DNA of 64,000 nucleotides from Mytilus trossulus (lineage: Eukaryota): positions 51,398,001 through 51,462,000 of the forward strand of contig NC_086381.1 in the NCBI RefSeq assembly GCF_036588685.1, given 5' to 3'. Positions 15,001-62,500 of this stretch are shown in pieces. A program made the translations under genes and the position numbers. The notes beneath the pieces were generated by a model. It was not told where the DNA came from and did not search any database. It saw nothing but the letters and a program-made list of their open reading frames with translations. Positions within the stretch are counted from its first letter, which is position 1, and each line of letters starts with the position of its first letter.

Positions 15001-15874
15001 TGAGAACAGAAATAGGGAATGTGTCAAAGGAATAACAACCCGACCAAAGAGGAAAAAACAGCCGAAGGCCACCGATGGGTCTTCAATACAAAGAAAACCC
15101 GCATCCGGAGGCATATAACTGTGTACATGTAATTTACTTGTCGATAGCCACATAAGAAAGAAAACCTTCTTTGAAAACCTAAGCGAATACGTGAATGGTG
15201 TCCGTTTGAGCTCATATTGTATTAGATTGTCCTGTTCTAAAAGCTATACTTGTCCTTTGGAAATTTTTTTTTTATTTGGTGATAACATTTATCGTTTATA
15301 GTGATGATTGAGATAAGAAAAACAGATTATTGTGTTGAAAAATTATCATAAACATGACTAAATCAAGTTCATTTAATGAGCAGCCTAGTTGGAGCACTAT
15401 GTTAGAACAGAAGTTTTGAATAAAACCGTATAATTATTGAAGGTTTGAAATGCATTAGACTTTGATTGCCAATTAAAAATGTAGTCATCATAGTTCTGTT
15501 GATGTGATGTGTCTTATAGACAGTGATATTTGCAAACAGTATTAGTATCTACAAAAAATATTAGACACATTGACCTTTTTCAAGCGTTTAACGATCTCTG
15601 AGGCAGATATAGTGAACTTACATTAAAAGCTTGTACGTTAAAGAGATGCATTCTATAAATTGACATACGAATTTATTTTACTTAAGTTCATAAAGTTTAC
15701 TTCAGTGCATGGAATATACACGATAAACAAGCCAATAGTTTTTTTAACACCTTTATAATGATTGTTCTACGAATGTCTTTTACAGGAACCAATTACCAAG
15801 TTTTGTTAAATACACAACGTGAATTTGCAAAAGATATAATTGGAAGGGAAAGAGATGGTGATCATTTAAAATAA
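1..15874 (+). CDS. TRPM-like (TRPM2-like/TRPS-like) cation channel, paralog A; 5'-partial, 17 exons: <1-36, 734-845, 1616-1712, 2437-2585, 3261-3374, 4693-4752, 5848-5950, 6383-6556, 6840-6939, 8256-8535, 10305-10373, 10976-11107, 11918-12169, 12946-13141, 13630-13789, 14780-14961, 15786-15874
   Basis: All junctions are GT-AG with a consistent phase chain and no in-frame stop until TAA 15872-15874. Motifs: GTADLVA (SLOG end), ITVFNI, AVISNHVDLAAELWSQCENPLLTALVA (MHR4), FISHPSAQ, FVTAPIIK (pre-S1), WNMLD (S3), FLRLL (S4), PYWQVYGEL (pore), NWLLLNIVIAMFS (S6), WRFHR...PSPL (TRP domain). Confidence 0.9.
275..488 (+). repeat. Interspersed repeat family A (3' part)
   Basis: gagcaggatctgct...gccatggctttgtcagt...tgaatgtccctctggtatctttcgcccctc; copies at 47750-47980 (+), 26320-26460 (-), 31225-31290 (-), 50170-50250 (-). 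Confidence 0.75.
734..845 (+). CDS. TRPM-like A exon: (D)MNKLKRKLPVMFSRRFSDDMFEKMKKVLDRILQKEWM
   Basis: ttttcag acceptor, gtattt donor; phase 2->0 bridges the flanking exons. Confidence 0.7.
1238..1460 (+). mobile_element. Hammerhead-bearing repeat, decayed core (GAAA lost)
   Basis: gagcgtcactgatgagtcttatgtaaacatgacgcgcatctggcgt...ggtaccttt; homologous to 17225-17360 (-). Confidence 0.75.
1616..1712 (+). CDS. TRPM-like A exon: ITVFNIKKNKDDELWGKITDGILRAWSFEKKK
   Basis: tttttacag acceptor; similar to the TRPM 'ITVF...D.D.AIL.ALLK' motif; phase 0->1. Confidence 0.75.
2437..2585 (+). CDS. TRPM-like A exon (MHR3 region): DDVSVTYDPILPTQIDF...SRKELFAG...QDFHQ
   Basis: Strong polypyrimidine acceptor tttttttccag; phase 1->0; the donor choice (gtgatt) is less certain. 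Confidence 0.6.
3261..3374 (+). CDS. TRPM-like A exon: HTFVNAFLGKRTDIIQQVLSVDAKFTLAEDQFQTLCRE
   Basis: Aligns by eye with TRPM 'AMMDAL..DRVDFVKLLLENG...FLT...L..LY'; ag/gtaata junctions. Confidence 0.7.
4693..4752 (+). CDS. TRPM-like A small exon: VVKSISSKTDNGMNGFTLVE
   Basis: ttttattgcag acceptor, gtatta donor, 60 nt phase 0-0; no motif support. Confidence 0.45.
4975..5315 (+). repeat. Interspersed repeat family F (tttgattttgccatttgattagggacttt), partly tandem
   Basis: Copies at 4495-4580, 20135-20230, 40290-40570, 58100-58210. Confidence 0.65.
5848..5950 (+). CDS. TRPM-like A exon: NVYPEAFTYLKEGKGPGFKNARDAVIKISNKLLQ
   Basis: tttgtttcag acceptor, gttagt donor, phase 0->1. Confidence 0.65.
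6383..6556 (+). CDS. TRPM-like A exon (MHR4 start): GICFSKFGMVTCCKT...RVAVISNHVDLAAELWSQCENPL
   Basis: Matches TRPM 'WAVL.NR..MA..FW....EP'; donor gtaaga. Confidence 0.85.
6840..6939 (+). CDS. TRPM-like A exon: LTALVAHTYLIALADKAESLYEEELNKNLLSHSR
   Basis: 'ALVA' MHR4 motif; cag/gtacgt junctions. Confidence 0.85.
8256..8535 (+). CDS. TRPM-like A exon: KFLSRAIKLLDKLFQKDEDMATKALDYTSEVWG...FISHPSAQ...
   Basis: Matches TRPM 'F...A.ELLD.CY..DE..A..LL......WG...L..A.......FIAHP..Q'. Confidence 0.9.
8648..9162 (+). repeat. Interspersed repeat family C (agatataggaagatg...gagacaactct) with nested MITE
   Basis: Copies at 24678-24960 (+), 935-1105 (-), 31835-32120 (-), 33340-33720, 55725-56190, 56990-57225. 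Confidence 0.75.
8924..9025. mobile_element. ~100-bp hairpin MITE nested in a family C repeat
   Basis: ~35-bp TIRs agtcggtttcacaaaaaaacgtatgactaagatt / aatcttagtcttaaggtttttttgtgaaatcgact; interrupts catcag|attcc, which is continuous at 24922-24932. Confidence 0.75.
9770..10207 (-). repeat. Interspersed repeat family D
   Basis: Reverse complement of aataaaggcaacagtagtataccgctgttcaaaactc... at 11311, 44968, 61136. Confidence 0.85.
10305..10373 (+). CDS. TRPM-like A pre-S1 exon: HHMNWKSTWKFVTAPIIKLVVNV
   Basis: 'F..AP..KF..N' motif; 69 nt, same length as paralog exon 63022-63090. Confidence 0.85.
10976..11107 (+). CDS. TRPM-like A S1-S2 exon
   Basis: VFFILALVLFSYFLTRDL...SVLEVMLFFYMIGDLLEELWSM. 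Confidence 0.9.
11311..11634 (+). repeat. Interspersed repeat family D
   Basis: Near-identical inverted partner of 9888-10207. Confidence 0.85.
11918..12169 (+). CDS. TRPM-like A S3-S4 exon
   Basis: WNMLDLFCIILYIVGF...RRLYSLALFIMFLRLLNVLLLIKRIGIIIIMIKEM. Confidence 0.92.
12946..13141 (+). CDS. TRPM-like A S5-pore exon
   Basis: LVDLVEYLVILILFMLAAGIVYQANIYPN...IPYWQVYGELYLDIIE. Confidence 0.92.
13630..13789 (+). CDS. TRPM-like A outer pore-S6 exon
   Basis: GSDDTGCTNNATLWNNDPSIKRCPTSDLIPPVIAATYMMLTNWLLLNIVIAMFS. Confidence 0.92.
13950..14204 (+). mobile_element. SINE (V-SINE-like core) with (AATC)n tail
   Basis: Degenerate B-box gagtccgaacacc, core ttttctccgggcattctggtgtcctccac, tail gatcaatcaatcaat; 5' fragment also at 7755-7858. 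Confidence 0.6.
14780..14961 (+). CDS. TRPM-like A TRP-domain exon
   Basis: ARFDLIKEKSSQKWRFHRHSVVIEYEHKIPSPLNIPFR...CLVPCFVCSSC. Confidence 0.9.
15786..15874 (+). CDS. TRPM-like A terminal coding exon: GTNYQVLLNTQREFAKDIIGRERDGDHLK*
   Basis: ttttacag acceptor, phase 1; homologous to the last exon of paralog B (ERQFAKVII). Confidence 0.75.
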
Positions 15875-17224
15875 CTTGAACGTATTGAATATTAACAAGG
15901 ATAAGTGAAATTTTTATTTCTTGTTGATTAAATGAACAGATGTTTTAGCGATATTTTACTTTAGCTGTTGACCTGATAATGTTTGGGTTGACTCTTTTTT
16001 TTCTAATCTTGCTTTATTGTAATTTTACTGTGTGTTTCATATTATTTCTTTTTAACTTTGTGAAACTTCAAACAGTAAACTATGTATGTTTTTGTGAATG
16101 CATTATAATAAATCTATATAATACTAATGGAAGATTTTTTAGAGCCACAACTCCTCTCAAACCATACAAATTTTTTTGTACTTCCTAAATTTGTCTTTGA
16201 AACAATGATTTTTCAACAGAAAACGGAAATTTTTTAGAAAATATTCAAATTCGGGTACCGTTATCTATCTGTGTCTTATACACGTTGGAGCATGCTAAGT
16301 CGACGTACTGCCCGCGATAAGAAGAAATGATATAAGGGAGGACAGTTAGACCTTTACGGGTTCTGTATTGTATTGTAAGTTCATCCTTTTGATGAATTAA
16401 ACGACATTTACCCTTTTCACTCGGATGCAGAACTGTCCCAAAATGATATAGAAGTTGGACGTGTCGAAGTGATCCCCCCTTTTCATGTGTGAACACAGGC
16501 TTCTGACGTTTGACCCCCCCTTCATGTTTTACAACTTTCGGGCATCTTCTAGTATCACAAATAAAAATCTTATTTACGCAACACAACATATGTATTCCAA
16601 ACGTTCTCTTAGATCACTGTATATACATTCCAAATCCCATTGCAAATACAATGTATATGCAGTCAGTGAACATTCATTAATCTCTCTACATGTTAATGAT
16701 TATCCATATGTTTAAACAAGGAGATGTGGACAATGTGTCAATGACAATGGTATAACTTTCTAACAGAGACAAACTAATATAGAAGTTTGTATCAATTGGC
16801 CACGGTAGAGTTTATTGCATATCACTGGCAAATTATATAAGGCCCTTACTTGAAAAGTAAACCAGTTGAGACGAGTAGCAAATTTTATGCCAGTAAATAC
16901 AGTAAGTGAACCAGTAAATTATCTTTTTGTAGATGGTAACGTTCGCTTGTCAATATGTTATTGTGTATATATTTTTTGACTTATTCGAGTCGGTCGTGTA
17001 TGTAACGACGTATTTGGTTTAAGACATCTCTGTTTTACACCAGAGTTTTCGATTTTACAAACAAGAAAGCACATTTAGTAGGTTTCATCATCGGTATTAG
17101 AACACCATGCATAGATATTTATCAACATGCCGACATCTTATACTTTCAGGTATTTTACATTCAATATTTTATGGTTATATTCTTTATAAAGCACAAACAT
17201 GTCTGCATTTACCAGCTAACCAAA

Positions 17225-17362
17225 TAGTTATCAAAGGTACCAGGATTATAATTTGATACGCCAGACGCGCGTTTCGTCTACATAAGACTCATCAGTGACG
17301 CTCAGATCAAAACAGTTAAAAATCCAAACAAATACAAAGTTGAAGAGCATTGATGAACCAAA
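17225..17362 (-). mobile_element. Hammerhead-bearing repeat (retrozyme/PLE-like) fragment
   Basis: Reverse-complement homolog of 1320-1460 and 41040-41180. Confidence 0.75.
17252..17311 (-). ncRNA. Type I hammerhead ribozyme (apparently intact) in an interspersed repeat
   Basis: Minus strand: UUUGAU-cuga-GCGUCA CUGAUGA GUCU-uaugu-AGAC GAAA CGCGCG UC^ UGGCGU-AUCAAA. Full catalytic core, stems I and II, palindromic stem III (ACGCGCGU), GUC cleavage triplet. Confidence 0.88.
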
Positions 17363-35700: not shown

Positions 35701-38700
35701 TGAACAATCTTCGTTTTCGGAAAACACTGATTTATGTAGAATAAAAGCAAAATCATAATATATGAACGTCGATTATATCTATCATTATTATTATGTTATT
35801 ATACAGTGAATATCAACGAGCAATTACACATCGGAAATTGTTTAAAAGTTACAAGGGCTCACGACCAAAATAGTTCTTTTAGAGCAAGCCCGTGTAATGG
35901 AGTCTCCAAACCGTTGTGTACAAGTAAGAACTTATTTATGAAACTGTGTCTGTTTTGTTTAATCAACTAATATGAGTTTGCGTATTGTTTTGTTTCTTGC
36001 CCCTATAGCTCCTCAAAAATGCGTCCTCTGATTATATAGTTTCATTCCACGTTACATAACTTTATAAATTTCAATGGTCAATTTAAATGAATTTTCAATG
36101 AGTAATGCGATTTCAAGATACTGTTCTGGTGGGTTATATGAATCAACTGACCAGCTAGTGTACGCAGTTTATATATATAGAATATATAAATAAAAATGTG
36201 AAAATGTGGTATGAGACATCTCACCTTTTAAGTCACTATGCATAAAAAGTAATCAATTAAAGATTAAACTACAGCCTTCAACCGGAACGTTGGAAAACCG
36301 GCAACCACTGACCAACTGGCTCCTGACTTCGAAAGGTGCATACAATTACAGCGATTTGAATTGTTTAACAGGCACGTACACTAACCTTACTATGAGAAAG
36401 AAGTTTATCACTTCAACATAAACATTTTATATTAAGGATATAGTTTTGTTAGGTTAAGGATTTTTTCAGATGTTCGAAATCTGTTGGTTTTTACTTACGA
36501 TACAGGTTACACAATGTGCCCCATATCATCCATCCTTTTTTCATGAAAGACTAGGAGAGTTCAACATGGGTCGTTTCTAAAATATTAGCACATTCTAGAT
36601 TTTATTTGAGACCCAAATAAGGCCTGCGCTTAATATAAGTTAAAAGTCTAAGTAACTCTTTTCTCGCCCTTTCTTTAAATTACAATATCTTGAAATGAAT
36701 TGTCATTAACCCTTAATACTCTAAGCTTACTGTGTTCTTTTACTACGGCTCTTCTGATTAACAATATCAATTTCAAATTTTCTTAAAAATTGTTTTAAAT
36801 TTCACCTAACTACAACCCTTAACATTGCTGTAAAACGAAAACTTGTTTTTGTTTTAGGCTGCATTTTTGAGTTTGTTTATTAAATCATTGTCATCTTTTT
36901 TAATACATGAATCAGGCATGCGCAGTTTCTACGGACATTCGCAAAATTGGATAAGCTCTTTCAGCCAATGTAAACCAGAACTCTTTGTTTCATATGATCG
37001 TTACAAACAGTCACAACTATGGCAAGAAGGACTATTTTGGTTAGCTAATATAAGGAGACCATATATTAACCATTTCCTGGTATGTTTAATAAGCCAAGCC
37101 GTCTGTTTGATATGATTTTGTGTATCTATTTTTTACATTTTCTGTATTTTAATTTAGATTTTAAACAACACTAATTTCTAATCGTTATTTATAAATTAAT
37201 CAAGGTTGTAACAACTAAAGTAAAGTTGACCTTTTATATGTTCATTATAGCTTGGCTTATGTATGTATCCAAAAATACAAAGTAGTAAATAATTTATATT
37301 ATACCTTTGCAAATACATTAAATATCAGATGAATCAATCGGTCATACATAAAATTTGTATTAAGGTTTCACTGATGAGTCTTATGTAGACGAAACTAAAT
37401 AATAATCCTGGTACCTTTGATAACTATATTCGCAGGATTTAAAACTGGGTTCAATACATCATTTTCTACATAAAACAAAATTTCTTGATATTTGACAACT
37501 GTTATAGGAAAAACGTAGTATGTAACGTGTAGTGTGATATCTTCACTATACCCTATTAACTACTTATAACTAATTTGGTAACTTGATGTACAGTAGTTCG
37601 TCTTTTGGGATTTCTTCTGACTCCCTTTTTACATCGATTTACCACTTCGAAAATGTTTACCGACAATTGCGCATCGTTGAAATATTCTGGATGTACCTTC
37701 ATCAGGAACGATTAAAACCAAATATTTGAATACCACAGACTTATAAGAACCGAAACTATTGAAGAACTATTTGACAAACATTAACCTTATAGTCACATTA
37801 TCGGGTTAAGGAAAATAGACTTCATGCAATTATTGTTTTATGTTCTATAATCATGATAATGGCATACTTTTTATTTTGACGATATTTTCATGAAAAATGT
37901 CTCTTTAAAGAAGGAGAAATTATTGATACGGAAATTTTATGTCCAAAACAGTTGCTTTCTTTTGAAGTGTTAGTTAAAAAAAAAGCATTACAAATCATGT
38001 TAATGAAATCTGAATGATACAAAAAAAAAGATATCACTTTGATCAAACAATTGTCAAATGACTGTTGAATTATTTAGTTAGCAACATCTAATAATATACT
38101 ATATAAAGTTTATACATTGCAGTTGGGTTAGAATGTTACTGGTGAAATTTATGGCGAAGCGCGTATTGCCTTCTTAGTAAAATACGATAAATAAGAGTAG
38201 AAATAAAATACCCGGTCAAAATATACATCAACCAAAACAAACATACATGCATATTATACATCAAGTACTTAATTTACAGAATTTGAACCTAAATACTGTA
38301 TGGCTGTGACCACACGAACATGTGATCATCGGGTATATACATATGTCAGGCAATGCACAGAAAAACTACCAGTCTTATGTGCTGTCACAAATAAGACGTC
38401 GCCGGAAAATATACCATCTACTTATTCGGTTGAGATTCCTGAACTGGACTTCATTGTTAACACGACCAAAAGTACGTTTGTATTTAATGTTTCTTTTAAT
38501 AGTCTTAAAGTGAGAATGAGTCAAAGAGACAACAGCACAATCAAATGTCAGAACACAACTGCATTTTTCATGTACCTATTAAATGCTTACGTGTTTTTAC
38601 CGAATCTTTTTTGCTAAATTTTGGGAAAAAAATTATTAAAAGAAATGTAGTATATTTGTTGATTAAGGGAAATCTACTCACACTTTTAGGTTGTATCGTT

Positions 38701-41700
38701 ATGATTTTATCTGAAATTATTTGAGTTAAACGTACAATATTCCTTCCAATTCTAGCCTTTTTATTGTAAACATGGTAAAGGCTAGAGTTTACTTTTTGTA
38801 TGTACTAATATAAAGTTGGCTTTTTTTTTCTTTTTGACCCGCCTTATTTAGTTTATTTGTATAAGTATTCTGTGTTGTATGAATGTATGCATGTATGCTA
38901 ACTCAAGTCGTTTGTTCCATAACAGATACTGTACCAGCGTCCGATATTACAACATTTACAATTTCGGTTGAAGTTCCTGAACTGGATTCTAATGTAAAAG
39001 CGAGTAATAGTAAGTTACTCATTTGATGTTCCGTTATATAGCCGTGTATGATTTATCAATTGCATGTTACTTGTGTACGGCATATGTTGTACATTCTCTC
39101 TGTTCCTCGATTTCCAATTTTACATATACATCAGTTCATCCTCTATTGACTCTTAAAATTCAAGAGTTAATCTAAAAATGAGGGTACTTTCTCTAAAAGT
39201 GAGGGTGCTTTTTATATGGCCTTCCAAATACCGTTTCGATCCCTAACATCACTGAAGAGACATTTATTGTCAAAATCCGGATATGGCCATGGTGTACTAA
39301 AGAAATATTGACACCGAATGTTTGTGGCACAAAATCCTGTCCACAAGTTAACAATTTTTTTTTTTCTGTGACGTATTAAATTTATATTTGGATCCATTTT
39401 GTTACATCTTGTGATCAATTTTATTTGGCAATCGCCAATGGCAGTCAGCAGGGTTAAAGAACATCAGTTGTTCGACCTGTTAGTCAAATGCGTTTTGTTT
39501 AAAAATACTTTTTCACTTCTTTGGTCTTTTTGGAAAATGTTGTTTGTGCTGTTTTTAGACCCTTCTACAACGACATTTGTGTTACATGCACACGTATAAA
39601 AGTTGCGGTTTTTATCCAACGCAATCATCGGTTTGACCGTAGTTTTCAATTTAGACTCGTATATATATCCATATATATATGTAGCTCGTCTAAACATCAA
39701 CCCAACAATGTTAGATCTGTTAATATGCTTTCGCAAATTTTTCGTTCTTCCCTCGCCGGGATTCGAACCCATGCTACTGTGATATCGTGACAGCAAATCG
39801 CCTGTTCTGACATTATTCATCATCTAAATAACGTATTAATTTTCTTTGTTTTTCTTTGTATTTTTAGATTCATTTTTAAGTCATTTATGAGCATTATTTT
39901 GTCTGGTCTGTGCGTCCGTTACCTCGTTCGTTCGTCCGTTCGTCCGTCTGTCCCGCTCATGGTAAAGTGTTCAGGTTAATGTTTTTGGTTGAGTTAGTTT
40001 TTGATGAAGTTGAAGTCCAATCAACTTGAAACTTAGTACACATGTCCACTTCGATATGATCTTACGTATTCATTTGCCGAAAAAGAGATTTAACCCCATT
40101 TTAACGGTCCACTGAATATAGAAAAATAACAGTCTTGATGGGCATCTGTGTACTATGGACATATTCTTGTTGTTTTTAATGCAGTTTGTCACTTAAAAAT
40201 TACTTCTTGTTTCACATTTGTCTTTTTGTTTTACTTATATACCTTATTTACCTTGTTTTCATGCCATTCAGTTTCAACAGTTATTTATGATTAAGATTTT
40301 ATAATAATGTTGACTGATGTACCAACAATTTGACGTTTTTTACTCATTATGTTTAATTACTCACTTATGGTTGTCAACATAATAGAATAAGTGAGATTTT
40401 AGATGTTTAGCTAGCTATAAAATAAGGTTTAATCCCAATTTTCTACATAGGAAAATGTCTGGTTATGACCTGTGGTTTCCATTCGTTAGAAATGTTTGAG
40501 CTTTTGATTTGTCATTTAATAAAGGACTTTACGTTTTGAATTTCCCTGGGAGTTCGTTAGTTTTGTTTTTTTAACGGTTGTTCATATACATTTCAGATAT
40601 TCTACTGATAACACTGGTTATAACAGCCGTACAAGCTGTTGTGGTTTTTATTGTAGTGATCGTTGTATGCATAAGGTATGGTTTCCTGCTAAAATTATTA
40701 TCGAATGGATAGGACTGGAAGTATATTTTCTTATTTAAAACTGATGTCGCAGTTAAAAACAAATTGGAGTAAAAAATGTAATGAGATATTATCGATAGTT
40801 TTTCTAGCAATTGAAACATATAAATACCAAACTTATTATTATCCTTTTGAAGTTGTAAATGTATACCTCAAGTATATAAAAACAAAAAGACAGAATTGCA
40901 TCACCTAATTATAACCATTTTTTACAAATATGTTTCTTTTTTTTTTCAAATCTATTGTCCAATTTTGTAATAACTTGCATAAGCGAGAAGCTATTATATG
41001 ATATTGCCTTGAGTATATTTGGCAAAACTTTAAGGAATGTCTTGTCCTAACTGCTCTTCAAATTCGTACTTTATTAGGCCTTTTCAACATTTTGTCATTC
41101 TAGAGTCACTGATGGGTCTTTTGTAGACGAAACGCGCGTCTAGATCAAATATACAATTCAAATACAGGTACCTATGATGCGTTTCACCAAAAAGGATTGA
41201 TAAGAAAAGCCAAATGAATATTCAACCATATTTGCATGACTGAGTAGAAACATAAGTTTCTTGATCATTTCTGTATTGATCAACGACGTATTTTAGCAAA
41301 TTATGTTAACAGTACCTTAGCAAGGGTTTTTGAGCTAAAAATTCAGTCGGAGAACATAATGGGGTTAATTGATGGTTACATATATTGATATTTGGAGATC
41401 TTGTACTGTTGACTGTTCATTCTGTTACAGTTTAAGTCTATCTTTTATTGTTACATTATTGATAAATTCATAAATAAGCTAAAATGCAACTCCTTGATGT
41501 TTTCGTTTGATAGTCCCAATCCCTAATCTCGGATTATCAATCTGTTATCTCGAATTAAGACAATATACCTTGAATATATTTAATACTCCGTTATATTAGA
41601 ATTTTATTACATTTTTTTATATTGAGGAATAGTTATATTTTAGGTTACGTGATCAAGAGTTTTGAAGACGAAGTCTATTCTTCCAAAACATTCCGTTTAA

Positions 41701-50563: not shown

Positions 50564-53500
50564 CTATAACAGTCAGAAAATCTTGCAGTTATATATTTAT
50601 ACGTATCTTCAAACATCAATCGGGGTTATCGTTTTTTCAACATTCACCAAATCTGTTCATTTTGTGATAACTGTAATCATTATCACGTTGAGAAAACGTT
50701 CATGTGATTTGCTAAGGTTTTTATATAATATGGAGATATGGAGGTGCATGTTTTATTAAATCTATTGCAGAAATGTGTTTAAACACCTGTAAGCAAGATA
50801 AGACATTCTTCAATAGAAGTTATTAATGATTAAAACAGCCTCATACTAGCAAAACTGTTATAGTATATCAATTACAATTCGCCTCAGTTTAAACTATACG
50901 TGTTTAATTATTCTAGCATCATATATCTGGTTATGTAAATAATTATTGACGAAATGTTTAATCTTCGATGTATTTAGGATAACGTATAATTCAAAAAGAA
51001 TAATGTGCTTATCGATTTGTTTATTTTAAAATGTGTAAATTAATTCGACCAAAGATGAATTCATTGCTTACAAGAATTGTTATTTTAATGAATAATTAGA
51101 TAGATTATTGCCAAAATTTGAGAACTGAACATTTAACATTCATTGTGTCTAGGTTATACTGTACAGTGGATGTTGGTGTATCCTGTTGTTGCCATTATAT
51201 TCGTAAATACGTTTGTCCTTAACTCAATTTTACTTTAAATTACCTGTTGTTGTTTTCTTATAACATGGACAACATGGACATTTTTTAGTATACCATAAGA
51301 AACTGAAAATTCTAAATGGAAAATTGAGTGGTGACGGTATTCTATCTTCAAAATCAATTATAACTGAATGTCGATAGTAACGCCATTTCTGTTCGGATTT
51401 TTTTCGAATTTCCTTAAACCGTGCACTGCAACAGAAACATAAATTTGTACATACAACGCTATATCAAGGAATAACAAAATTTACTAGAAATCTGAAGTCA
51501 AATGTCTATCAGATTTGTAAAATCGCCTAAACTTTATATATACTAGTGAACAAAAGAAACTATACAAGACAGTGTATTTTCTATATATAATGAAATGGAT
51601 ACCCTGTGCCAAGGTAACTAATTGTCCAATTGGTCTAAATTTTACAAAGAGTTGTTTTCTTATCAAACTGATAGATTTAAGCTAAAGATACGATCTTTTT
51701 GTTGTTGGATTTTTTTGTTGTTGTAGGGATAACGTATATACATGTTGTATAACTGTTATTAGGAAAATATTTTAGTTTCATATCTTTCAAGTGAATTATA
51801 AGTCCAATGTGATGGGTGTACAAACATTTTATTGATATGTATTACCTGTATTTTTACAGTCTATATATATATATAGTACACAATGTTACTATAATAAACA
51901 AATTCGTATTTGTATTCTTATTCTTAGATCAAAAATATATTGTTTTACTAGAAAATCCAAAAAATGGTATTAGAATTTAAAGATTTGAATGCGCTTGCAG
52001 AGAACACCTGATTTTCATCTTCAAAATCAAATGCCGACTTTTTTTATCATTTTATACAAAATACACTTGTTCCCTGTGTTCAAATAACTCAGTGTTCTCT
52101 AACTTTCCAATTTGGTCAGATTATTTTGGTCGTATGCCCTTGCTTTGTAAATAAATGTGTTTTTTTTATATTTTTACAGCTTATTTTCAGGAGTTTAAAC
52201 TTGTGTATAGCTTTTTTGATTGACTAGTATACTTCATAAATATTTAATATCAATGGCATATTACCTATATATATTCTTTGAAAATTAACTGTCTCTCTGT
52301 CATACCAATACATGGATATATTTTGTAACTTTGACAGAAATACACATTTTAAATTGTTATTTCCCGAGAGTGTCTAAATTGTCTAAATTGTCTGAACATC
52401 GATTTTACAGTTACATAATTCTGAACTATTACGGAAGTTTCATTGTTTTTAGGATTATTTCAAGCGTTATTTATGCGCACAGTTTGGTTGAATTATATAG
52501 ACACTATACCTTTATTATATGTATATAAATAGTAGCAAGAGTAGAAATTGCTCTGTCAAATAAGGCCCAATAATTTAAAAAGCGTGTCTAAGTTTGTTAC
52601 TAAAAAAAATCATTTATTCAAATTCTAAATAAAGGGTATTTCAATTGGTCATAAGCTTACTAGGAAAGAAGTAAAATCAGCAGTCCCTCCTTAATACTCC
52701 TCTTATTTCTGTATATTTTAACTATCAAATCTAAAATAAGTTTACGCACAAATATGTCACTATTTCCACTAGTAAATAATACAATATTAGTTTATATTGC
52801 ATTTCTAAACATAAGTTACGATTTCAATTTCTACAATTAAAGACACAAATTGTTTGAATAACTGTCCTCATGAACAAACAATTAGATCGACATCTTGTTA
52901 ACGATTTATACAATTTGACTTTGGCATTCATACCACATCTTCGTATCTATTTATACTATGAATACTGTTTAATTAATACATTGAATAAACACATGTATGA
53001 CATACCTGAACATTGCAATAACAATATTTAATAACAACCAGTTTGTCAACATCATATAAATCGCAGCAATTACTGGTGTTATCCAATCTCCCGTTGCACA
53101 ATTTGCGTTATCCTTGCAATCCGAATTATCATTTCCTTCAAATAAACAGATTGAAAGAATATATCATGGAAACTATAAAGGACATGGTGAACACATGAAA
53201 AAAGAAAGTAAGATTTGAATTATTGTCCAGCGTGACAATCTTCCGAAGAAACAGATTCTATAGTTAGACAATATACGTATAGTGTCTTGAAATATGAAAT
53301 GTATTTGTATGAGGCTTAGAAACGGGAAAATGCGAGGTTCTACCGAGCATTTTCCCGTTTCGTGCCGAATACAAATAAAATTCATCTTTCAAAACACTAT
53401 ACGTATATTGTTTTTATACTGAAATCGAAAAAAAATAATGAAAAATGAAAAAAATATGTAACAAAAATTGTTAAAAATGTGTTTTGAATTTCCCTCTTGG

Positions 53501-56500
53501 GGTACCATTTTAGGGAATTTCCCTATGAACGTAGTCCAGGCGGTAAGACATTGACATATTAAGGAATTAGAAAGGGAAAATGAACTTAATTAATAACATT
53601 TGATAAACATGGTATATAAATAACCAATGTGAAGACATAAAAGTTTAAATTCATAAAAGTTTGATCATTGTTACTTTACGTTGTCATGGTCGTGATGTGA
53701 CGTTGTTGATGAAATACAGTAGTTCCGGTAAGGAGGCGGGGCTATTAGGTTTGTTGAGGTCATTGACGTATAGAGGTAACGTTTATACGTATAGCTTTAT
53801 CTGTATAGTAAAATAGCTGATTGCAGTATAAATCTTTTATTATATTATGGTTAGCCCTTTATAAACAGTTTACAATGCTATTCAATAAAAAGTATGAATT
53901 GTTTGTTTGCGAATGGTTCACGAATATATGCCCATAGAGATTCACGATATTATAAGGACTTCTCAACGCAAGTTTAAAGACATTTCGTTTATTGTTTGAC
54001 AATAAATTATATAGCTATATTCTGCCAACTCTTGTACAAACAAGAATGTGTCCAACGTACACGGATGTCCTTTCGCATGCCTACTCGCATACTCATTTTC
54101 CATGGTCAATGGACCATAAAACTGGGTAAAAATATAATTTGGCATTAACAGTAGAAAAATCATACAAAGGGGAATATGTGTACTACGTTTGAAGTTGTTT
54201 GGACTTTTAACTACCTTAACCAAAAACGTAAACCTGAAACTTGCACTTTCATTTTCTATGTCCAGTGGATCATGAAATTTTGGTCAAAAATCTTATTTGG
54301 CTATAAAATTATAAAGATCAGATTATAAGGAATATGTGTACCAATTGCAAGTTTCCAGTTGATTGGACTTCAGCTTCATTAAAAACTACTTTTACCAGAA
54401 ACTATAACCTGAAGCGAGACGAACGGACAGACGAACAAGCAGACGGACAATCGCACAGAATAAACAAATAATGCCCCTCTACTATCGTAGGATGGGCTGA
54501 AAAATATGGAACGCCACAGCTGCCTTGTGATGACAAGAATCATATAATTAAGGGTAAAGACATATCATGTAGCAAATGTTATATACTATAATAATATTTG
54601 ACTATAATACTCTGTCAATTTGCAACATTCCCTACAGATAAATATTACTAAGATAAATGTATATACTATAAAGACACTTTGAAACAACATTGAGTTAAAT
54701 TTCAAACTATTTTTTCACTTTGGTATATTATTACGACACATTTGTATACTATACAGTCATCTGAATATAGCATGGAACAATTGTGTCACACTATCATGTC
54801 TTATAAGTATCGTATTTAGACATGTTTTGATATAAAGCTAACAATTCTTTTATCACAACGTTTCATCTATATAACAGTAGACTATTTGTTTACACTATCA
54901 GACCATTTAACTATACCATTATACCATTTCATCATCCCAAAAGACAAATTTTTAAATAACGGCGAAAATCATCTGAAACATTGATTATTATAATGAGAAA
55001 AGATCCTTAAGGAAATAATTTTGCGGACCTTAGGGAATCGCTTTCAAGATGAATGAATTTATCAATTTTTATGTTGCATTTGCCCTCAGTGATACAGAGT
55101 TGAAAAGACTTTGTGTCGACACGAAAGGCGACACATGTAATGATAATATAATACGTTCGTTATTTCAAGAGGGATAGGCTCAAGTCAGGGATACCTTTAC
55201 CCTTATGCCTCGTTCACACGCACATTTAGTAAATGGCAATCGAATTCGAATTACGTGTGAACGCAGTGTGTAGGTCAACAAATTACTTAAAACCTTTACT
55301 ATATCTTCCATAGATATAAATATTTGGTTTTAAAGTTTGAGGTTAACTGTGCACAACTTATTTCAAACGGGAATGCACATCTTCATTTTTACGGACATGT
55401 TATTTACCATGCCCGGAAATTAAGTAACAATTCTAGTTAATTTATCGATTTTTCAAGTAAACTTTTCTAAAAGGTTTAAAATTCAATTCTGTTATTAGAT
55501 CACAGATTATTGTTTTTAATGGTTTTAATAATGATTTTGTTATTATTTAATGAAAAGGAAACTTAATACTTATACACATTCAGGGATCTACAATCTGTCG
55601 ATACCAGTATATTGGCATTGCATAGTGTCATGGTAGAGTCATTTATCTATCTATCAGTAACTACAAGTACTTTTTTGTTGTTGTGATGTACAAGCTAAGT
55701 ACCCGGCCACGTCAACAGAAGATCTGCTATGATTGCCAATGAGACAAATCGCCACAGGAGACCAAAATAACACAGAAATTATTAACTATAGGTCACCGTA
55801 AGGCCTTCAACAATGAGAAAAGTCTATACCGCATAGTCAACTTTAATAAACAAAAAAAAGACCCAGAAATGTCAATGTAAAACGGTTCAAACGAAAAAGA
55901 TAAAAGCCTTAATTATTTATGTACAAAAAATCAATTGAAAAAATATGTAATACATAAACAAACGAAATGCACTGAATTACAGACTCCTGTCTTGAACAGG
56001 TATATATATATATATATATACAGCATGTGGCGGGGTAGTAAATGTAAGGGGGGTCCCAATCCGTCCCAGACCTTGAACAGAGGTATAACATTACAATATT
56101 AGAACGAACTATACAAGTCAGTCGAAAAAGGCTTAACTCATCAGATGGACAAAATACAAGTGAACGTTGCCGGTTACTTGTACATCCCAATAAAAAAAAA
56201 TTCTATGTACATAACTGACTTAACTGACAGCTAGTACAAAGAAACTTACTACTAATGAAAAATTCATGCATCTAAGAGTAAGATTTTCGCATACTTATTC
56301 ACATACAAATTAGCAGAAACTATGTCATATCCATACGTCCTTTAATCTAGTATAATGATGATTTTTACACCAATGTCATGCATTTTAATTAAACATCTGC
56401 GGTCTTGATTTTGTTTCAGCTTTAAGTTGATAATAATATTTAATAATATATCTAAATTATCATGGGTACGGGATATATGGTTAGAGTTAAGGGTAGCACA

Positions 56501-59500
56501 TTTTTCACCGTACCTGTCAACATGATTTGAAAACACTTGCTTTAAGTAAACTCTCTCAAAAACAGCTTGCTTTCATGATTGTTAAAATTTGGCATAAAAT
56601 TATATAGGCCATCTTTGTGTTTTAGGATTGCATGTTATTTAGTTTTTGTGTGGGTTTTTTTAGGAGTACCCACCTGTATGTGCTGTCTTTCCTGTCAACA
56701 CCAAGTCTTTTCAACTCCCAATTGCTTAGGGCAAATGCAACATTAGAGTCCCATCTTTTATTTTGTTCCTAATTTTAATTCATATTCTACTTTTTGCATG
56801 TTCCTCATTGTGGATTTCACCCTCAGCTTAGACTTAATTCTGCTATGTTTTTTTTTTTTACAAAAGTGTAATTTGGCCAGATCATTAAAAATGTCTTCAC
56901 ACACTGAAGAATAAAAGTACTCATAAAAGGTGTTTGTATCGTGTGACACATTTTTCGTAAAGGAAACTTCCAAAATAACTTAAAAAAAAAAGATGTGGTA
57001 TGATTTCCAATAAGACAACTGTTCACACGAGACCAAAATGACACAGACATCAACAACTATAGGTCACCGTACAGCCTTCAACAGATAGCCAGGCCCATAC
57101 TGCATATTTAGCTATAAAAGGCCCCGATATGACGATATAAAACAATTCAAACGAAAAAACTAACGGCCTTATTTATATAAAAAAATGATGAAAAAACAAA
57201 TATGTAACACATAAACAAACGACAAATCGTTTTACTTTAAAATATGATAAAATGGATGTAAAACCTTCTAAGGTATCCATAAATAGTTCTCCATAAACCT
57301 GCCAGTATGGAATTTGTAGAATTGACCATGTTCTCCAATTCTCAGTATTACTTGGTCCTGCGATTGTATGGCTTGGATACACATTGGCATGATACACAAC
57401 GCCAGCAGCCAATATAAGGATGATAAGTATTACCAAATACTGCATCAAATCCACAAGCTGAAAACATAAATTCTGTTTGATACGAACATGCTTAGAAATA
57501 TATTTTTCTGTACATGTTTAAGCCACTTTATTATGTTTATCAAATGTAATTACCCATTGGAAGGTTGGGTCCTTTAGAAAAGTGTGTATTACATTTATAA
57601 CATGAAATGCATTTTGATAAACAACATATCGTCAGTTATATTCGATACCAAAATATTGAACCTTCAAAAAAAATTAAAGAGATTAATAAATTAAGAAAGA
57701 CAAAACATTAGCCGGATAAGGGACGCCCTTTGTTAGCTATATATAATTACTCCGACTATACATATACAATTCAGTTTTTTTAGTTCAAGTTTCAATAGTT
57801 CACAGTATTCTTATTTTTATGCCAGTGCCAAACAAACTTGGTCCTGGAATATGAACCGACAGAACCCGGTTATCAGCCTAGAATACAAACACGTGTTAGT
57901 TTTAAATTAAACTGTAGCAATGTTACCATGATTAATGAACAGGATGAGTATTTCGACCAAAAAAGTCTCTTCGGTAGATATCCTTATATATTGATGTCTG
58001 CTAATCATTTACTTTGAATTGAAATGAATTGAAATTGTTGATTTTGTTAACGCTGACATGCTGTCGATACATCGATACTTTCACAACTATAATTTGTTTA
58101 TATTATCCATTTGTTTGATCATTTTTTTATAATAGTTTTTGCCATTGATTTTGTCATTTGATAGGACAATTTCCATTTGGATTTTTCAAGAAGTTGTTTA
58201 TTTTACTTCTTACAAGATAGTTGAGATCTCAAAATTTATTTTTGTTAAGTAACATGTTAAGAAATACTGTTTGGATTAACGGTTACCTTTGAATATTGCC
58301 TGGATGTTGCATGTCGGATAATAGATCATTGCAAAATGCTTTGAGTTCTTGCGAAAGGGACGACATAAATTCAATAAATCAATTAATGTATAAACGATGT
58401 ATTTTGAACTTTTAAATGAACGGTCCTGTTCTTCAAAATCTTTTTTTTTAATTTGGACCCAATTTTATATCACGTGTTATAAATACATTAGCACTAAAAC
58501 AACAATTTTATATGTGCTTGTTTTTGTTCAAAACGTAAAACCATAGTCACCATGTCATGATTTTGTCTACTTTCATTAGGAGTTACAGCATAATAAAATC
58601 AACGGTACCAATTTTGTTGCACCAGATGCGCATTTCGACAATAAATGTCTCTTCAGTCATGCTCGTGGCCAAAATATTTGATATCCAAAGCATATATAAA
58701 AGATGAAGAGCTATAATCCAAAAGGTCCAAAAAGTATAGCCAAATTCATGAGGAATCAGAGCTTTGCATGAGGGAGATACGTTCCTTAATTTATAATAAT
58801 TTCTAATATTTTGTAACAACAAATTTTAATAACACAAAAAATCCGTATTTTCATGCCAGTACTGAAGTACTGGCTACTGGGCTAGTGGCATAACTGTATT
58901 GTAAACAACAAAAGAGTGTCTAATCTGCATTGAACTGTTCTTTTATTCTATACTGGTGTTGTAATTGTTTGTATAGTATTGGATTGAATATGGTTTGTGG
59001 AACCTCTAAATCAAAGAAGGAATAATTGCACTTATTTTTACGTTAGTGGTCCCATCAAAATTACCTATATACAACGTTGGTTGTGAGACCCTTAAATTAA
59101 AAGAAGACAATACAGCTTTTTTTTACATGAAGGGTCCTATTGAAATTAGCTATACATATACCGTAGATTATAAGACCCCTTAATAAAAGAGACATTATAG
59201 TACTCTTTTACCTTTTGGGTCATATCATAATTACCTATATATAATATAGGTTGTTAGACTCCTAAAGTAAAAGAAGACATTAAATCACTCTTTTGCTATG
59301 AGCATCCGAAATAGTTTAATCAGAAACAAAATGAAAGGACGTCAAGATATAGAATTTCATTCACTTAAGCTGGGGTCACACATTCACGATTTTTACTACA
59401 GTTCTTGACAGGACCATTCCCGATTAAAATTTATTAAAAGTCCGATCAAGATCCTGTGAATCGTGGATGGAAATTCAAACTTAAATTAAAATTTGTGAAA

Positions 59501-62500
59501 AAAATAATTTGATCACGACAACAATCAGATAGTGTCCAGGAAGCACCGATATTCAACCGTTTCTAAGCAAATAAGTCCCGATAATCCCGTTCTGAATCCG
59601 CTTCTAATCCGATTTGTATTTTTCGCCAGGTAAAATTCGACCGAGTCTGTCACGACTGCGTCCCGACTCTACCGAATGTAATCCGACTAAGATCAGACAG
59701 TGACCAGACAGTGAACCGACGCTGACGGAAGTTATTTGTTCGAAAACTGTCGGCATATTCGGGATGATCAGGTACGGTCGGAACGTAATCCTATCACGGT
59801 CCGCTCTACCGCACTGCAAACGGCTTTGTCTTGTATTCTGTAGTTGTCGGGACTCTGACGTGGGTATCATTGACGAATTTCGTATTAATAACGGGACTCA
59901 ATCGTCAGAAAAACAGCAATGAAAAATTACTCCGGATCATTCCCGTTCAACAGGACACCGTCCAGAATACACAAGACATTGTTCGGAATTCAATCCGATA
60001 CAGCAGAATCTGTCACCACAAAGCCACGATTGTAATCCGATTAGACAAAATCGGCTGAGTTGCCCCGAATGTTACGGGACGCACCTAACTGTCGGGATGC
60101 TTTGCCGAACTATTCGGACCCTTCCCGATCCGTAGGAATCTGTTACGAACTAAAACGAATTTGTTCAGACAATGATAGGACATTCCAGATAATTGAGGAT
60201 AGCAATCCGACTTTTTCACTTCTTATATCGTATTGCTGTCTGATCTCAAACGGGAGCAATAATCGGCAATGTGTGAACCCCGCATTACAAAAAGATTAAG
60301 TTTTGATATTAATACCAAAAAATATGTTGATGAAGTGGGACCCCTAAAGTCAAATAAAAAAATGTCAGGACCCCTAAACTACTTTCACTTTAGGGGTCCC
60401 TACGCAACTGTTAAAGGGAAGAGGGTCCCACAGTATATACAAAATGCTATATACTGTTGTTTTTAAAATATATACTGGTGAATTAATTGTTTACATTGTA
60501 TTGGCTTGTATATAGCATGTAGAGGTTGTTGGAATTTTTTTAATTCTATCATTTCTAACAATAGTCACATTAGATTAAATCAAATTACATAGGCTAAATT
60601 ATAGTACATTCGTTTCTTAATTTGTAAATATATTATACTAACCATTTCTTTCACCATGATTATGATTATACCAAACCGTTTAGACAATAACAGGAAATTT
60701 AATAGTCGAAGGAACATGATAAACAAAGCTATACTGTATATTCGCCTTGTATGTGCTATCAAATCTGAGTCCAAAATATGCATGCAAAATCCGAGTATGT
60801 ACAATATGAAGCACAGCAAATCCAAAATGTTCCAAATATTAAATATGTGGAGAAATATTCTTTGTGGTGACCAGTGGCAATCTTTTTGCGGACGAATCTA
60901 TAATGAAAACAATATGGAATTACCATACAACCTGCACAATATATACCTGTCATCAGGTAAAGGAAATACAATTATGTAATAGTAACTTTCATTTTCATGT
61001 CCATTAGTTAAACAAAGAACAACAGGCAGATGAATAAACAGCAAAAAAAATGTATAGCATGCTTTACAAGAGAGGACCCAGTATAAATATATTTGCATCA
61101 TAATTATCAACATTTTAAAGTATAACTATCATTACTAAAGGCAACAGTAGTATACCACTGTTCAAAATTCACAAAACGATAGAGAAAAACAAATCCGGGC
61201 AACAAACCAGAACCGACGGAAATGTATCAAATATAAGAGAACTACGACACAACAGAGACGCAACAACGACTATACTCGAACTATAATGTAACAATTGCCA
61301 TTTTCCTGTCTTCGTACAGGGCATTTTATGAAGAAAAAAAATGGTGGTTTGAACCTAGTTTTGTGGCATGCCAAACCTCCTGCTTTAATGGCAATGTTAA
61401 TTATAATTTTAAGATGAGAACATTACACGACAGGGTGACAAAAAATAAACAGATAAACGGTAGAAAATATAGGACAGAGAAACAAACGAATATTATTCAC
61501 TTACCATGCTCCATATTTCCTCTAATAAATCACCCAACATGTATATGAAGATCAAACCTTCTAGTAGATTAATTGAACCAGGCTGCAGGTCCCGAGTGAG
61601 GAAATAGCTGAACATCATTAAAGCCGTGATGAAAAATAACTGAAACATTAGTTTATTTTTTATAAAGAAGACCAATGTTGTCAGTTTAATTTGGATTTCA
61701 ATAATCATTAAATGACTGGACATCCGTATATATAATAACATACATTTTAAAGGCAATGTTTCGGTATTAGTTAAATCACCCTGCTATCATCAAATAAACA
61801 TTATGAAATGTAAAACTGGTAAGGGAAATTGTTGTTATTTTGTATCCTATTTTACCACGGATGAAATCTTTGCATTATGACTGCTGTTCTATTGATATGT
61901 ATAAGCCATCAAAAAAATGTTGGACATATATCAACATAGAATGTTACGAGTAGCTACGATTCCGGACCCATGTTTTGTTGAGTTATTTTATTATTATATT
62001 ATCTTTTGGATTTCAAATATTTGAGATTGAGCAATGTTTAAGATATATTATCAGTCCAAATTCACACTTTATTTTATCAAAAATACTGTGGTGGTACATT
62101 TATGACTATTAATACTACGTAAGAACAGATTGGTACTCTGGCTTCAGGACCGGTACTAGCATTTAATACTTTGATTAAATATTTTTTCTGTATATATCCT
62201 TAAAGAACATTCTAACTAGAAAACAACAACGACATTCTGAACTAGAACAAATTCATAACGATTTTTTAAAAAATTCTGAAGGGTGCGGGAATTTATCGCT
62301 ACATTGAAGACCTGTTGGTGACCTTCTGATGTTGTTGTTTTTTCTTTAGTCGGGTTGTTGTCTGTTTGACACATTCCCCATTTCCTTTCTCAATTTTATT
62401 TGGTATAATTTGAAATCGAATATCCACAAAAATGCATTACAATACATTTGTACTTGCAGTTTTAAAAGACAGGAAATTAAACAAACCATACGTCACCAAC

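What the first reader, a model, noticed from the sequence alone, without database searches (positions are those of the whole stretch)
58583..58885. Second hammerhead subfamily with compensatory changes in all three stems, in sense orientation in an intron of channel B
Seen: stem II GACA/UGUC vs GUCU/AGAC; stem III palindrome AUGCGCAU vs ACGCGCGU (and AUCCGGAU at ~39275); stem I GCAU(G)A/UGGUGC vs GCGUCA/UGGCGU; core CUGAAGA vs CUGAUGA. Covariation between subfamilies indicates selection on the RNA fold. This copy lies on the same strand as the channel B pre-mRNA (intron between the S3-S4 and S5 exons), so it could cut the pre-mRNA (inference). A G:G mismatch near the cut site may attenuate cleavage.
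Basis: partly seen in the sequence, partly recalled or inferred. Interest (0 to 1): 0.8.

Follow-up and report, generated by a model that had tools for sequence, protein, structure and literature searches.

The report
Worn retrozyme hammerhead copy in an intron
This is one worn, single copy of a very abundant and already described kind of mobile repeat of mussels that carries a self-cutting hammerhead RNA motif; it happens to sit inside an intron of an ion-channel gene and is most likely a harmless passenger.

Summary
A type I hammerhead motif lies on the minus strand at 58619-58662, with the predicted cut between 58625 and 58624. It has the core CUGAAGA...GAA, a 4-bp stem II and the palindrome AUGCGCAU. 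It differs from the hammerhead at 17256-17303 by compensatory changes in all three stems.

It is not a new ribozyme class. It is a solo, 5'-truncated 297-nt copy (58591-58887) of a 350-nt tandem "retrozyme" repeat. The genome holds 4,265 hammerheads of this subfamily and 43,194 hammerhead cores in all. The kind is published for mussels (PMC7229834). This scan has already noted it on other DNA of this genome (153 notes).

The copy does lie in sense in a 3,185-nt intron of a TRPM-like channel gene. However, the G:G mismatch is a rare change: 13 of 4,265 copies have G at that position and 4,165 have C. It weakens the hammerhead fold. In four RNA runs, 0 of 607 reads carried this copy's allele, and the neighbouring exons and unique intron had no reads.

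Cutting of the pre-mRNA is therefore unsupported, and kinetically unlikely to matter. One untested twist remains: the cut-site strand is intact and could pair with a canonical retrozyme RNA as a double hammerhead.

The parts
58591..58887 (-). Solo, 5'-truncated copy (297 nt) of the 350-nt retrozyme unit. It covers unit positions 86-350 plus 1-34, where unit position 1 is the first base after the cut.
   Evidence: Own-genome BLAST gave 126 scored matches of 896 candidates at 94-97% identity, many in 350-nt tandem arrays. Against one array unit there are 288 matches, 9 mismatches and one 2-nt gap.
58619..58662 (-). Type I hammerhead motif: stem I 5' strand 58662-58657, core CUGAAGA 58656-58650, stem II 58649-58646 with 58640-58637, loop 2 58645-58641, GAA 58636-58634, palindromic stem III 58633-58626, C17 at 58625, stem I 3' strand 58624-58619.
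   Evidence: Sequence. RF00163 at 26.0 bits, E = 9e-5, model 1-45.
58624..58625 (-). Predicted self-cleavage site, after C58625.
   Evidence: Position of C17 in the motif. No pile of read ends here in 4 RNA runs (table 6).
58658..58658 (-). Rare G at hammerhead position 2.2. It makes the G:G mismatch with G58623; the family has C here.
   Evidence: Of 4,265 pattern matches, 4,165 have C and 13 have G. 607 of 607 RNA reads have the family letter.
57458..60642 (-). Host intron, 3,185 nt, phase 0, with donor GTTAGT and acceptor ...ttttcag.
   Evidence: The flanking exons match consecutive TRPM segments.
60643..60897 (-). S3-S4 exon of the TRPM-like channel (open frame 60583-60897; the exon ends at 60643).
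   Evidence: phmmer against PDB: TRPM2 chanzyme residues 863-938, E = 4.5e-5. Pfam Ion_trans E = 3.9e-4, 20.1 bits, below the cut-off of 25.
57176..57457 (-). S5-pore exon of the same gene. The exon starts at 57457; its 3' limit was not determined.
   Evidence: phmmer against PDB: TRPM2-like 6co7 residues 982-1045, E = 1.6e-11.
17222..17362 (-). Comparison copy: 5'-truncated 141-nt copy of the major subfamily (355-nt unit) with an intact hammerhead at 17256-17303.
39244..39297 (+). Relic of a third subfamily (stem III AUCCGGAU, about 573-nt units). G12 is changed to A, and there is a 6-nt insertion in the stem I 3' strand.
37371..37394 (+). Fragment of the major subfamily. The core and stem II are present, but stem III and the cut site are deleted.
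   Evidence: compared with the canonical copies.

Best explanation
The feature is a single, 5'-truncated, roughly 3% diverged copy of a high-copy non-LTR retrozyme. This is a 350-nt non-coding repeat that carries one type I hammerhead per unit. In tandem arrays it is transcribed and, per the literature, processed to unit-length linear and circular RNAs. The copy was pasted into an intron of a TRPM-like channel gene in sense orientation, by a copy mechanism that starts from a fixed 3' end 33-36 nt past the cut site and often stops early.

The between-subfamily covariation shows that the hammerhead fold is kept in the active lineages of the element, in service of the element's own RNA processing. 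This particular copy is a decaying passenger. It has one cut site only, so it cannot release a unit-length RNA. It has no partner in cis for its palindromic stem III. It also carries a rare C-to-G change that breaks the base pair next to the cut site.

Its expected effect on the channel pre-mRNA is nil or very small.

Shown: its identity as a family copy, the truncation, the rare mismatch, the intron context, and the absence of reads from this copy. Inferred: the mode of insertion, the weak activity, and the lack of effect on the gene.
For: - Family and arrays: one search gave 126 scored matches at 94-97% identity, with 350-nt periodicity. One search gave 4,265 hammerheads of this subfamily against 0 for the control. 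One search gave 43,194 cores genome-wide against 32 for the control.
- Ends: in 18 loci examined (several overlap the same array), the element ends at unit position 33-36 in nearly all. 5' starts vary (10, 18, 69, 71, 73, 83, 115, 118, 126, 184, 212, 220, 237, 303, 308, 309, 312); the window copy starts at 86.
- Rare mismatch.
- Weaker fold: the hammerhead fold is -2.2 kcal/mol against -5.2 for the canonical copy. The canonical homodimer's lowest-energy structure is the double hammerhead (-30.3 against -18.6 for two monomers); the window copy's is not. Rfam gives 26.0 bits against 29.1-30 for two other copies of this subfamily, each itself slightly changed.
- Neutral decay: 9 mismatches in 297 nt, 2 of them in the 44-nt hammerhead.
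- RNA: 0 of 607 reads carry the window allele at 58658, and depth is zero on both exons and on the unique intron in 4 runs.
- Literature, passages read: PMC7229834 reports about 5,000 type I hammerheads in Mytilus galloprovincialis, two ribozyme families, 350-390-bp repeats, kobs about 0.1 per min and abundant circular RNAs. The preprint 10.64898/2026.07.22.740005 (sections 13 and 16) reports 43.9% of Xenopus tropicalis retrozyme copies overlapping introns.
Against: - The catalytic core, stem II, stem III and the whole cut-site strand are intact, so residual cleavage cannot be excluded.
- The RNA runs come from a coded organism that may not be the window's species. Only 6-18% of each run was read. 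The gene may be silent in those tissues, so absence of reads does not show that the intron is never transcribed.
- No consistent target-site duplication was found, so the insertion mechanism is inferred from the ends alone.
- I could not see the published mussel ribozyme sequences (supplement closed), so identity with the published families is probable, not shown.
Confidence: 0.78

Rival explanations
1. One reading: the sense-oriented hammerhead cuts the channel pre-mRNA in cis and so tunes expression of the gene, with the G:G mismatch attenuating the rate.
For: The sense orientation in the intron is confirmed. The core is intact. Intronic ribozymes can lower expression when they are fast; a passage in PMC10919898 cites Fong et al. 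2009.
Against: - The mismatch is a rare variant of one copy in a family of thousands, as expected from decay.
- The copy is a truncated solo unit.
- The published mussel hammerhead rate of about 0.1 per min gives a half-time near 7 min. The next exon is only 1,167 nt away. At the mammalian rate quoted in PMC10919898 (3.5-4.1 knt/min, unknown for this animal), about 3% would be cut before the acceptor exists. This is an inference.
- Slow ribozymes had no effect in the cited work.
- No RNA evidence.
Confidence: 0.08
2. Trans double hammerhead. The intact cut-site strand of this intronic copy pairs with an abundant canonical retrozyme RNA through the 8-nt palindrome and stem I. The partner's intact core then cuts the pre-mRNA, so the G:G mismatch, which lies in this copy's own enzyme strand, would not matter.
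For: The predicted lowest-energy heterodimer of the window copy with a canonical copy is the double hammerhead, -27.4 kcal/mol. In it the window's 3' strand is fully paired to the partner's 5' strand. All three subfamilies keep a perfect 8-nt palindrome (ACGCGCGU, AUGCGCAU, AUCCGGAU), with double changes at pairs 33-38 and 34-37. Family RNA is present in all four runs and is reported as abundant in mussels (PMC7229834).
Against: This is purely a thermodynamic prediction on 48-nt pieces. Retrozyme RNAs are reported to be mostly circular and highly self-paired. No reads from this intron exist to test it. The paper treats invertebrate hammerheads as acting as single motifs.
Confidence: 0.06
3. 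A chance match to the hammerhead consensus in AT-rich intron sequence.
For: Rfam gathering thresholds are not reached.
Against: The surrounding 297 nt is 96-97% identical to thousands of repeat units that all carry the motif. The pattern controls are near zero.
Confidence: 0.01

Closest known systems
Non-LTR retrozymes of the mussel Mytilus galloprovincialis (Cervera and de la Pena 2020, PMC7229834; passages read)
   Same: Type I hammerhead with 2 bp plus a tetraloop, or a palindrome, as helix III. Tandem repeats of about 350-390 bp (a 353-nt construct is named in the paper). More than one ribozyme family. Low GC: 37.7% for the unit. RNA reads that run across unit junctions.
   Different: The window element is a solo truncated unit, not an array. 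This assembly holds about 43,000 cores and at least three stem III classes, against about 5,000 copies and two families in the paper. The species of the window is not known to me, and the published sequences are in a supplement that I could not open.
Dimer-acting hammerheads of newt/axolotl satellite repeats and of Penelope-like elements (PMC7229834; PMC4209133 seen in a search listing only)
   Same: A very short helix III with a palindromic centre. The predicted double hammerhead is the lowest-energy dimer of canonical copies.
   Different: Dimer action has not been shown for the mussel motifs. The paper reports cleavage of a mussel genomic repeat at about 0.1 per min and treats invertebrate motifs as single.
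Intronic self-cleaving ribozymes of vertebrates: the CPEB3 ribozyme (PMC10919898, passages read) and hammerheads HH9/HH10 (recalled; cited in that paper's reference list)
   Same: A sense-oriented self-cleaving motif inside an intron.
   Different: Those are single-copy motifs conserved at orthologous positions. This one is a recent copy of a mobile repeat with a rare damaging change. There is no match to HH9/HH10 at this motif; the only HH9 hit is a weak 13.1-bit one at an unrelated hairpin, 58845-58893.
Penelope-like elements, with a hammerhead near the 3' end, 5' truncation, partial tandems and a 30-40-bp tail (PMC8557442, passages read; preprint 10.64898/2026.07.22.740005, sections 13 and 16 read)
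   Same: A fixed 3' end 33-36 nt past the hammerhead cut site, variable 5' truncation, and tandem partial copies.
   Different: No autonomous partner was identified here. The one Penelope-like copy I fetched has an N-terminal GIY-YIG domain and carries no hammerhead.

Membership tests
Hammerhead ribozyme, type I (Rfam RF00163) | Conserved core C3-U4-G5-A6-N7-G8-A9 and G12-A13-A14, A15.1:U16.1, and a non-G nucleotide at the cut site | tested here: met
   CUGAAGA, GAA, A58633:U58626 and C58625 are all present. Position 7 may be any base (recalled), so A instead of U is allowed.
Hammerhead ribozyme, type I (Rfam RF00163) | Three helices around the core, with helix I open and helices II and III closed | tested here: inconclusive
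   Helix II has 4 of 4 pairs. Helix III is an 8-nt palindrome (2 bp plus a tetraloop as a monomer). Helix I has 5 of 6 pairs, with G:G at 2.2:1.2. The hammerhead fold is -2.2 kcal/mol and is not the lowest-energy fold.
Hammerhead ribozyme, type I (Rfam RF00163) | Score at or above Rfam's gathering threshold (34 bits) | tested here: not met
   26.0 bits for this copy. Canonical family copies also fall just short, at 29.1-33 bits. No hit in the whole-window scan.
Hammerhead ribozyme, type I (Rfam RF00163) | Site-specific self-cleavage | not testable with these tools
   No read ends pile up at 58625/58624, and no reads come from this copy.
Metazoan non-LTR retrozyme | Type I hammerhead inside short tandem repeats of 150-450 bp with low GC | tested here: met
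   This holds for the family: 350-nt arrays on many chromosomes, GC 37.7%. The window element itself is a single 0.85-unit copy.
Metazoan non-LTR retrozyme | Expression as unit-length linear and circular RNA | tested here: inconclusive
   Family reads are present in 4 of 4 RNA runs. They continue from 58591 into the 51 nt that the window copy lacks, and join 58887 back to 58591. That fits tandem or circular RNA but cannot tell them apart.
Metazoan non-LTR retrozyme | Mobilisation by a Penelope-like element that shares its end | tested here: inconclusive
   The end pattern fits. The single Penelope-like copy examined had no hammerhead.
Conserved intronic regulatory ribozyme (CPEB3 / HH9 type) | Single-copy motif conserved at the orthologous intron position across species | tested here: not met
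   It is one of 4,265 near-identical copies. Orthologous loci in other species were not examined.

The most novel reading that the evidence does not exclude
Abundant retrozyme RNAs act in trans. Through the conserved 8-nt palindrome and stem I they would form double hammerheads with solo, sense-oriented copies buried in host introns, and cut those pre-mRNAs. A copy whose own enzyme strand is damaged, like this one, would then still be a target, and the repeat family would act as a dispersed RNA-guided knock-down system for the genes it has landed in.
Probability: 0.05. Interest if true: 0.75.

Novelty: new member of a known kind. Interest (0 to 1): 0.2.

Why it matters
On the most likely reading it does not matter much. 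It adds one decayed copy to a repeat family of tens of thousands, and it confirms, with counts from a chromosome-level assembly, what is published for mussel retrozymes.

Three points have modest value:
- The three lineages give a clean natural covariation set for the type I hammerhead. This includes conservation of an 8-nt palindrome, which argues for dimer action in an invertebrate.
- The fixed 3' end with 5' truncation supports copying from the 3' end, as for Penelope-like elements.
- The geometry of the double hammerhead suggests a testable way in which intronic solo copies could be cut in trans.

Tried and rejected
1. I first thought that arrays begin at the cleavage site, because short matches to query 301-330 preceded many arrays. 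Re-mapping to a unit that starts at the cut showed variable 5' starts instead. The idea was dropped.

2. Target-site duplications: the flanks of 18 loci showed no consistent repeat.

3. A tRNA-like origin of the conserved block: ARAGORN found nothing in three arrays.

4. A Penelope-like partner:
- Five 7.5-kb stretches upstream of dispersed hammerheads gave one weak RT-like frame (RVT_1, 13.3 bits, below the cut-off).
- A GIY-YIG scan gave 149 matches.
- The one copy fetched has an N-terminal endonuclease and no hammerhead.
- No partner was identified.

5. Testing cleavage with RNA reads failed for lack of reads from this locus.

6. The species was not determined, because the run listing is coded. 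'Mussel' rests on the fit to PMC7229834 and on earlier notes of the scan, not on a test of mine.

7. Supplementary Figure S4 of PMC7229834, with the published ribozyme sequences, was not available. I therefore cannot say which of the three lineages are in print.

8. The spliced gene model was searched exon by exon only. The exons were not joined.
Full report
**What is in the sequence.**
On the minus strand, 58662..58619 reads GCAUGA-CUGAAGA-GACA-UUUAU-UGUC-GAA-AUGCGCAU-C-UGGUGC. This is a type I hammerhead layout. Helix I is open, helix II is a 4-bp hairpin, and helix III is an 8-nt palindrome.

The latter has AAA in place of GAA.

A loose core pattern hits 3 times in the window against 0.02 expected. 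Rfam reports nothing at gathering scores for the whole window, and no hammerhead at this motif in an 801-nt E-value scan. On a 124-nt scan it gives RF00163 (hammerhead type I) over the full model at 26.0 bits, E = 9e-5, with the G:G pair flagged. Five copies without the G:G change, from elsewhere in the genome, score 29.1-33 bits, also just under the 34-bit gathering score; a sixth locus scanned, of the third lineage (L090), gave no hammerhead hit.

**What it belongs to.**
A search of the window's own 1.30-Gb assembly with 58560-58920(-) gave 126 scored matches out of 896 candidates, at 94-97% identity. Most lie in head-to-tail arrays with a 350-nt period on many chromosomes, with one hammerhead per unit.
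- A 34-place pattern for this subfamily's hammerhead occurs 4,265 times; the reversed control gives 0.
- A generic core pattern occurs 43,194 times; the control gives 32. Most of the first 100 listed belong to the CUGAUGA/GUCU lineage.
- A third lineage, with stem III AUCCGGAU, has 3,016 matches and units of about 573 nt. All 100 listed copies have CCGG.
- The 355-nt unit of the major lineage and the 350-nt unit of this one are homologous throughout: 253 of 342 aligned columns are identical, with score 259 against at most -29 for 50 shuffles.
- The third lineage shares only the hammerhead with this one.

**Fit to the literature.**
This matches the published description of mussel retrozymes. 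I read passages of PMC7229834. They report about 5,000 type I hammerheads in Mytilus galloprovincialis, two ribozyme families, 350-390-bp repeats, a 353-nt construct, self-cleavage at about 0.1 per min, and abundant circular RNAs.

I could not open the supplement that holds the published sequences, and the species of the window is not known to me. The identity is therefore probable, not shown. The scan itself has 153 earlier notes on these elements in this genome. Their readings (retrozyme, three lineages, fixed 3' end) agree with what I found independently.

**Covariation.**
I aligned 46 hammerheads (38 distinct): 3 from the window, one array copy, and 42 from the first 3 Mb of contig 1. The last group was chosen as one per array plus a selection of the solo copies listed (40 stretches out of the 100 places listed). 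I counted the 14 pairs of the hammerhead fold.
- 90.8% of 531 cells form standard pairs, against 16.4-42.7% when the 3' partners are slid by 1-3 columns.
- The covariation score is 0.294 against 0.153 for shuffles (0 of 500 reach it). The highest slid value is 0.116.
- 5 pairs have changes on both sides: one in stem I (G:C/A:U), two in stem II (U:A/A:U) and two in stem III (C:G/U:A and G:C/C:G).
- The number of pairs with a double change is not above the shuffles (5 against a mean of 5.1). The changes also trace to only about three lineages, so these are few events inherited by many copies.

Notably, all three lineages keep a perfect 8-nt palindrome in stem III. For canonical copies of two lineages, ViennaRNA predicts the classical double hammerhead as the lowest-energy dimer: -30.3 and -31.5 kcal/mol against -18.6 and -20.0 for two monomers.

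**Anatomy of this copy.**
In unit coordinates that start after the cut, the window element covers positions 86-350 and 1-34. It is a single 0.85-unit copy with one cut site, so it cannot release a unit-length RNA.

In the 18 loci examined (several overlap the same arrays), the element ends at unit position 33-36 in nearly all. The 5' ends are scattered. This is the pattern expected of copying that starts at a fixed 3' end and often stops early. It also fits the hammerhead-near-3'-end and 30-40-bp tail described for Penelope-like elements (PMC8557442, passages). I found no consistent target-site duplication, and I did not identify the partner element.

Against one array unit, the copy has 288 matches, 9 mismatches and a 2-nt gap. 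Two of the mismatches fall in the hammerhead.

**The G:G mismatch.**
One of those two mismatches is the G at 58658 that makes the G:G mismatch. Among the 4,265 pattern matches, this position is C in 4,165 and G in 13; the remaining 87 are A or T by subtraction. The window copy is the only G variant with a UUUAU loop.

The mismatch lowers the hammerhead fold from -5.2 to -2.2 kcal/mol and moves the predicted homodimer away from the double hammerhead. It looks like ordinary decay, not a tuned attenuator.

**Gene context.**
Open frames on the minus strand at 60583-60897 and 57176-57517 match consecutive parts of TRPM channels. The first matches TRPM2 chanzyme residues 863-938 (E = 4.5e-5). The second matches TRPM2-like 6co7 residues 982-1045 (E = 1.6e-11). 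Pfam Ion_trans is below its cut-off for the first and absent for the others.

The first exon ends ...AAA GAA ATG|GTTAGT at 60643/60642. The next begins ttttcag|CTT GTG at 57458/57457. This gives a phase-0 intron of 3,185 nt. The cut site lies 2,017 nt into the intron and 1,167 nt before the next exon. The exons were searched one by one and not joined.

**RNA.**
One call laid four raw RNA runs of a coded organism on 57100-61000.
- Depth was zero on both exons and on all unique intron sequence.
- The repeat copy collected depth of 2.8-134 per bin, all from other copies.
- At 58658, 607 of 607 reads carry the family letter. The same holds almost completely at 58682, 58692, 58781, 58819 and 58863.
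- Reads run on from 58591 into the 51 nt that this copy lacks, and join 58887 back to 58591, as expected of tandem or circular family RNA.
- No pile of ends appears at 58625/58624.

There is thus no evidence that this intron is transcribed in these samples, and the cleavage claim could not be tested. Three caveats apply. Only 6-18% of each run was read. The organism may differ from the window's. The gene may be silent in those tissues.

**How it most likely works.**
The family's hammerhead serves the element's own RNA processing. This copy is a passenger.

Even an undamaged mussel hammerhead, at about 0.1 per min, would cut few transcripts before the acceptor 1,167 nt downstream is made. At the mammalian elongation rate quoted in PMC10919898, my estimate is about 3%; the rate in this animal is unknown. 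That paper's summary of earlier work states that slow intronic ribozymes did not affect splicing while fast ones did.

In Xenopus, 43.9% of retrozyme copies overlap introns, with a modest depletion relative to intergenic DNA (preprint 10.64898/2026.07.22.740005, section 13). An intronic copy is therefore commonplace.

**What remains open.**
The cut-site strand of this copy is identical to the canonical one. In a double hammerhead, the cut in one RNA is made by the core of the other. The predicted heterodimer of the window copy with a canonical copy is such a double hammerhead (-27.4 kcal/mol), with the window's substrate strand fully paired. Cleavage in trans by abundant family RNA is therefore not excluded. 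I rate it at about 5%.

**Verdict.**
This is a new copy of a known kind, and interest is low.

Noticed in passing
L012:716-1065 (one 350-nt unit), unit stretch about 76-135 counted from the C of CUGAAGA: A block of about 60 nt is 26-29 of 30 identical between the 355-nt and 350-nt lineages. That is more conserved than the hammerhead itself (21-24 of 30) and than the 74% overall. It is absent from the 573-nt lineage. The window copy lacks its first part. ARAGORN finds no tRNA-like gene there. Its role (promoter, RT recognition or ligation site?) is unknown.
   Followed up: partly
window 10976-15032 (+) and 52972-61783 (-): Two paralogous TRPM-like channel genes lie in convergent orientation. 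The intron between the S3-S4 and S5 exons is about 700 nt in the plus-strand copy (12208 to 12925) and 3,185 nt in the minus-strand copy, which has taken up the retrozyme copy.
   Followed up: partly
window 57138-57225: A short stretch just beside or inside the 3' part of the S5 open frame collects RNA reads (depth 7-35). These reads have loose ends on both sides in all four runs, so they come from another expressed repeat elsewhere, not from this gene (tables 2 and 7).
   Followed up: no
window 59475-59610: A few reads skip 134 nt (ends CA..TC) inside the intron, at very low depth in three runs. This is probably a shorter copy of another repeat elsewhere (table 5).
   Followed up: no
L106 (G000:C10:30946500-30950900) and the list: Many GIY-YIG matches sit in open frames of exactly 1,056 aa, some in tandem about 4.28 kb apart. 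The one fetched has the endonuclease at the N-terminus (Naiad-like Penelope element) and no hammerhead between the copies. This looks like a young, possibly active family.
   Followed up: partly
G000:C1:1538620-1544598 and L091: The third hammerhead lineage (stem III AUCCGGAU, cut-site base A or C) forms arrays with a period of about 573 nt, some with adjacent inverted arrays. There are 3,016 cores genome-wide.
   Followed up: partly
window 58845-58880 (-): A perfect 8-bp hairpin (GCCAGUAC-UUCA-GUACUGGC) inside the retrozyme unit gave a weak, spurious HH9 hit of 13.1 bits. It is part of the repeat, and many reads begin or end near 58859-58869 (table 6).
   Followed up: no
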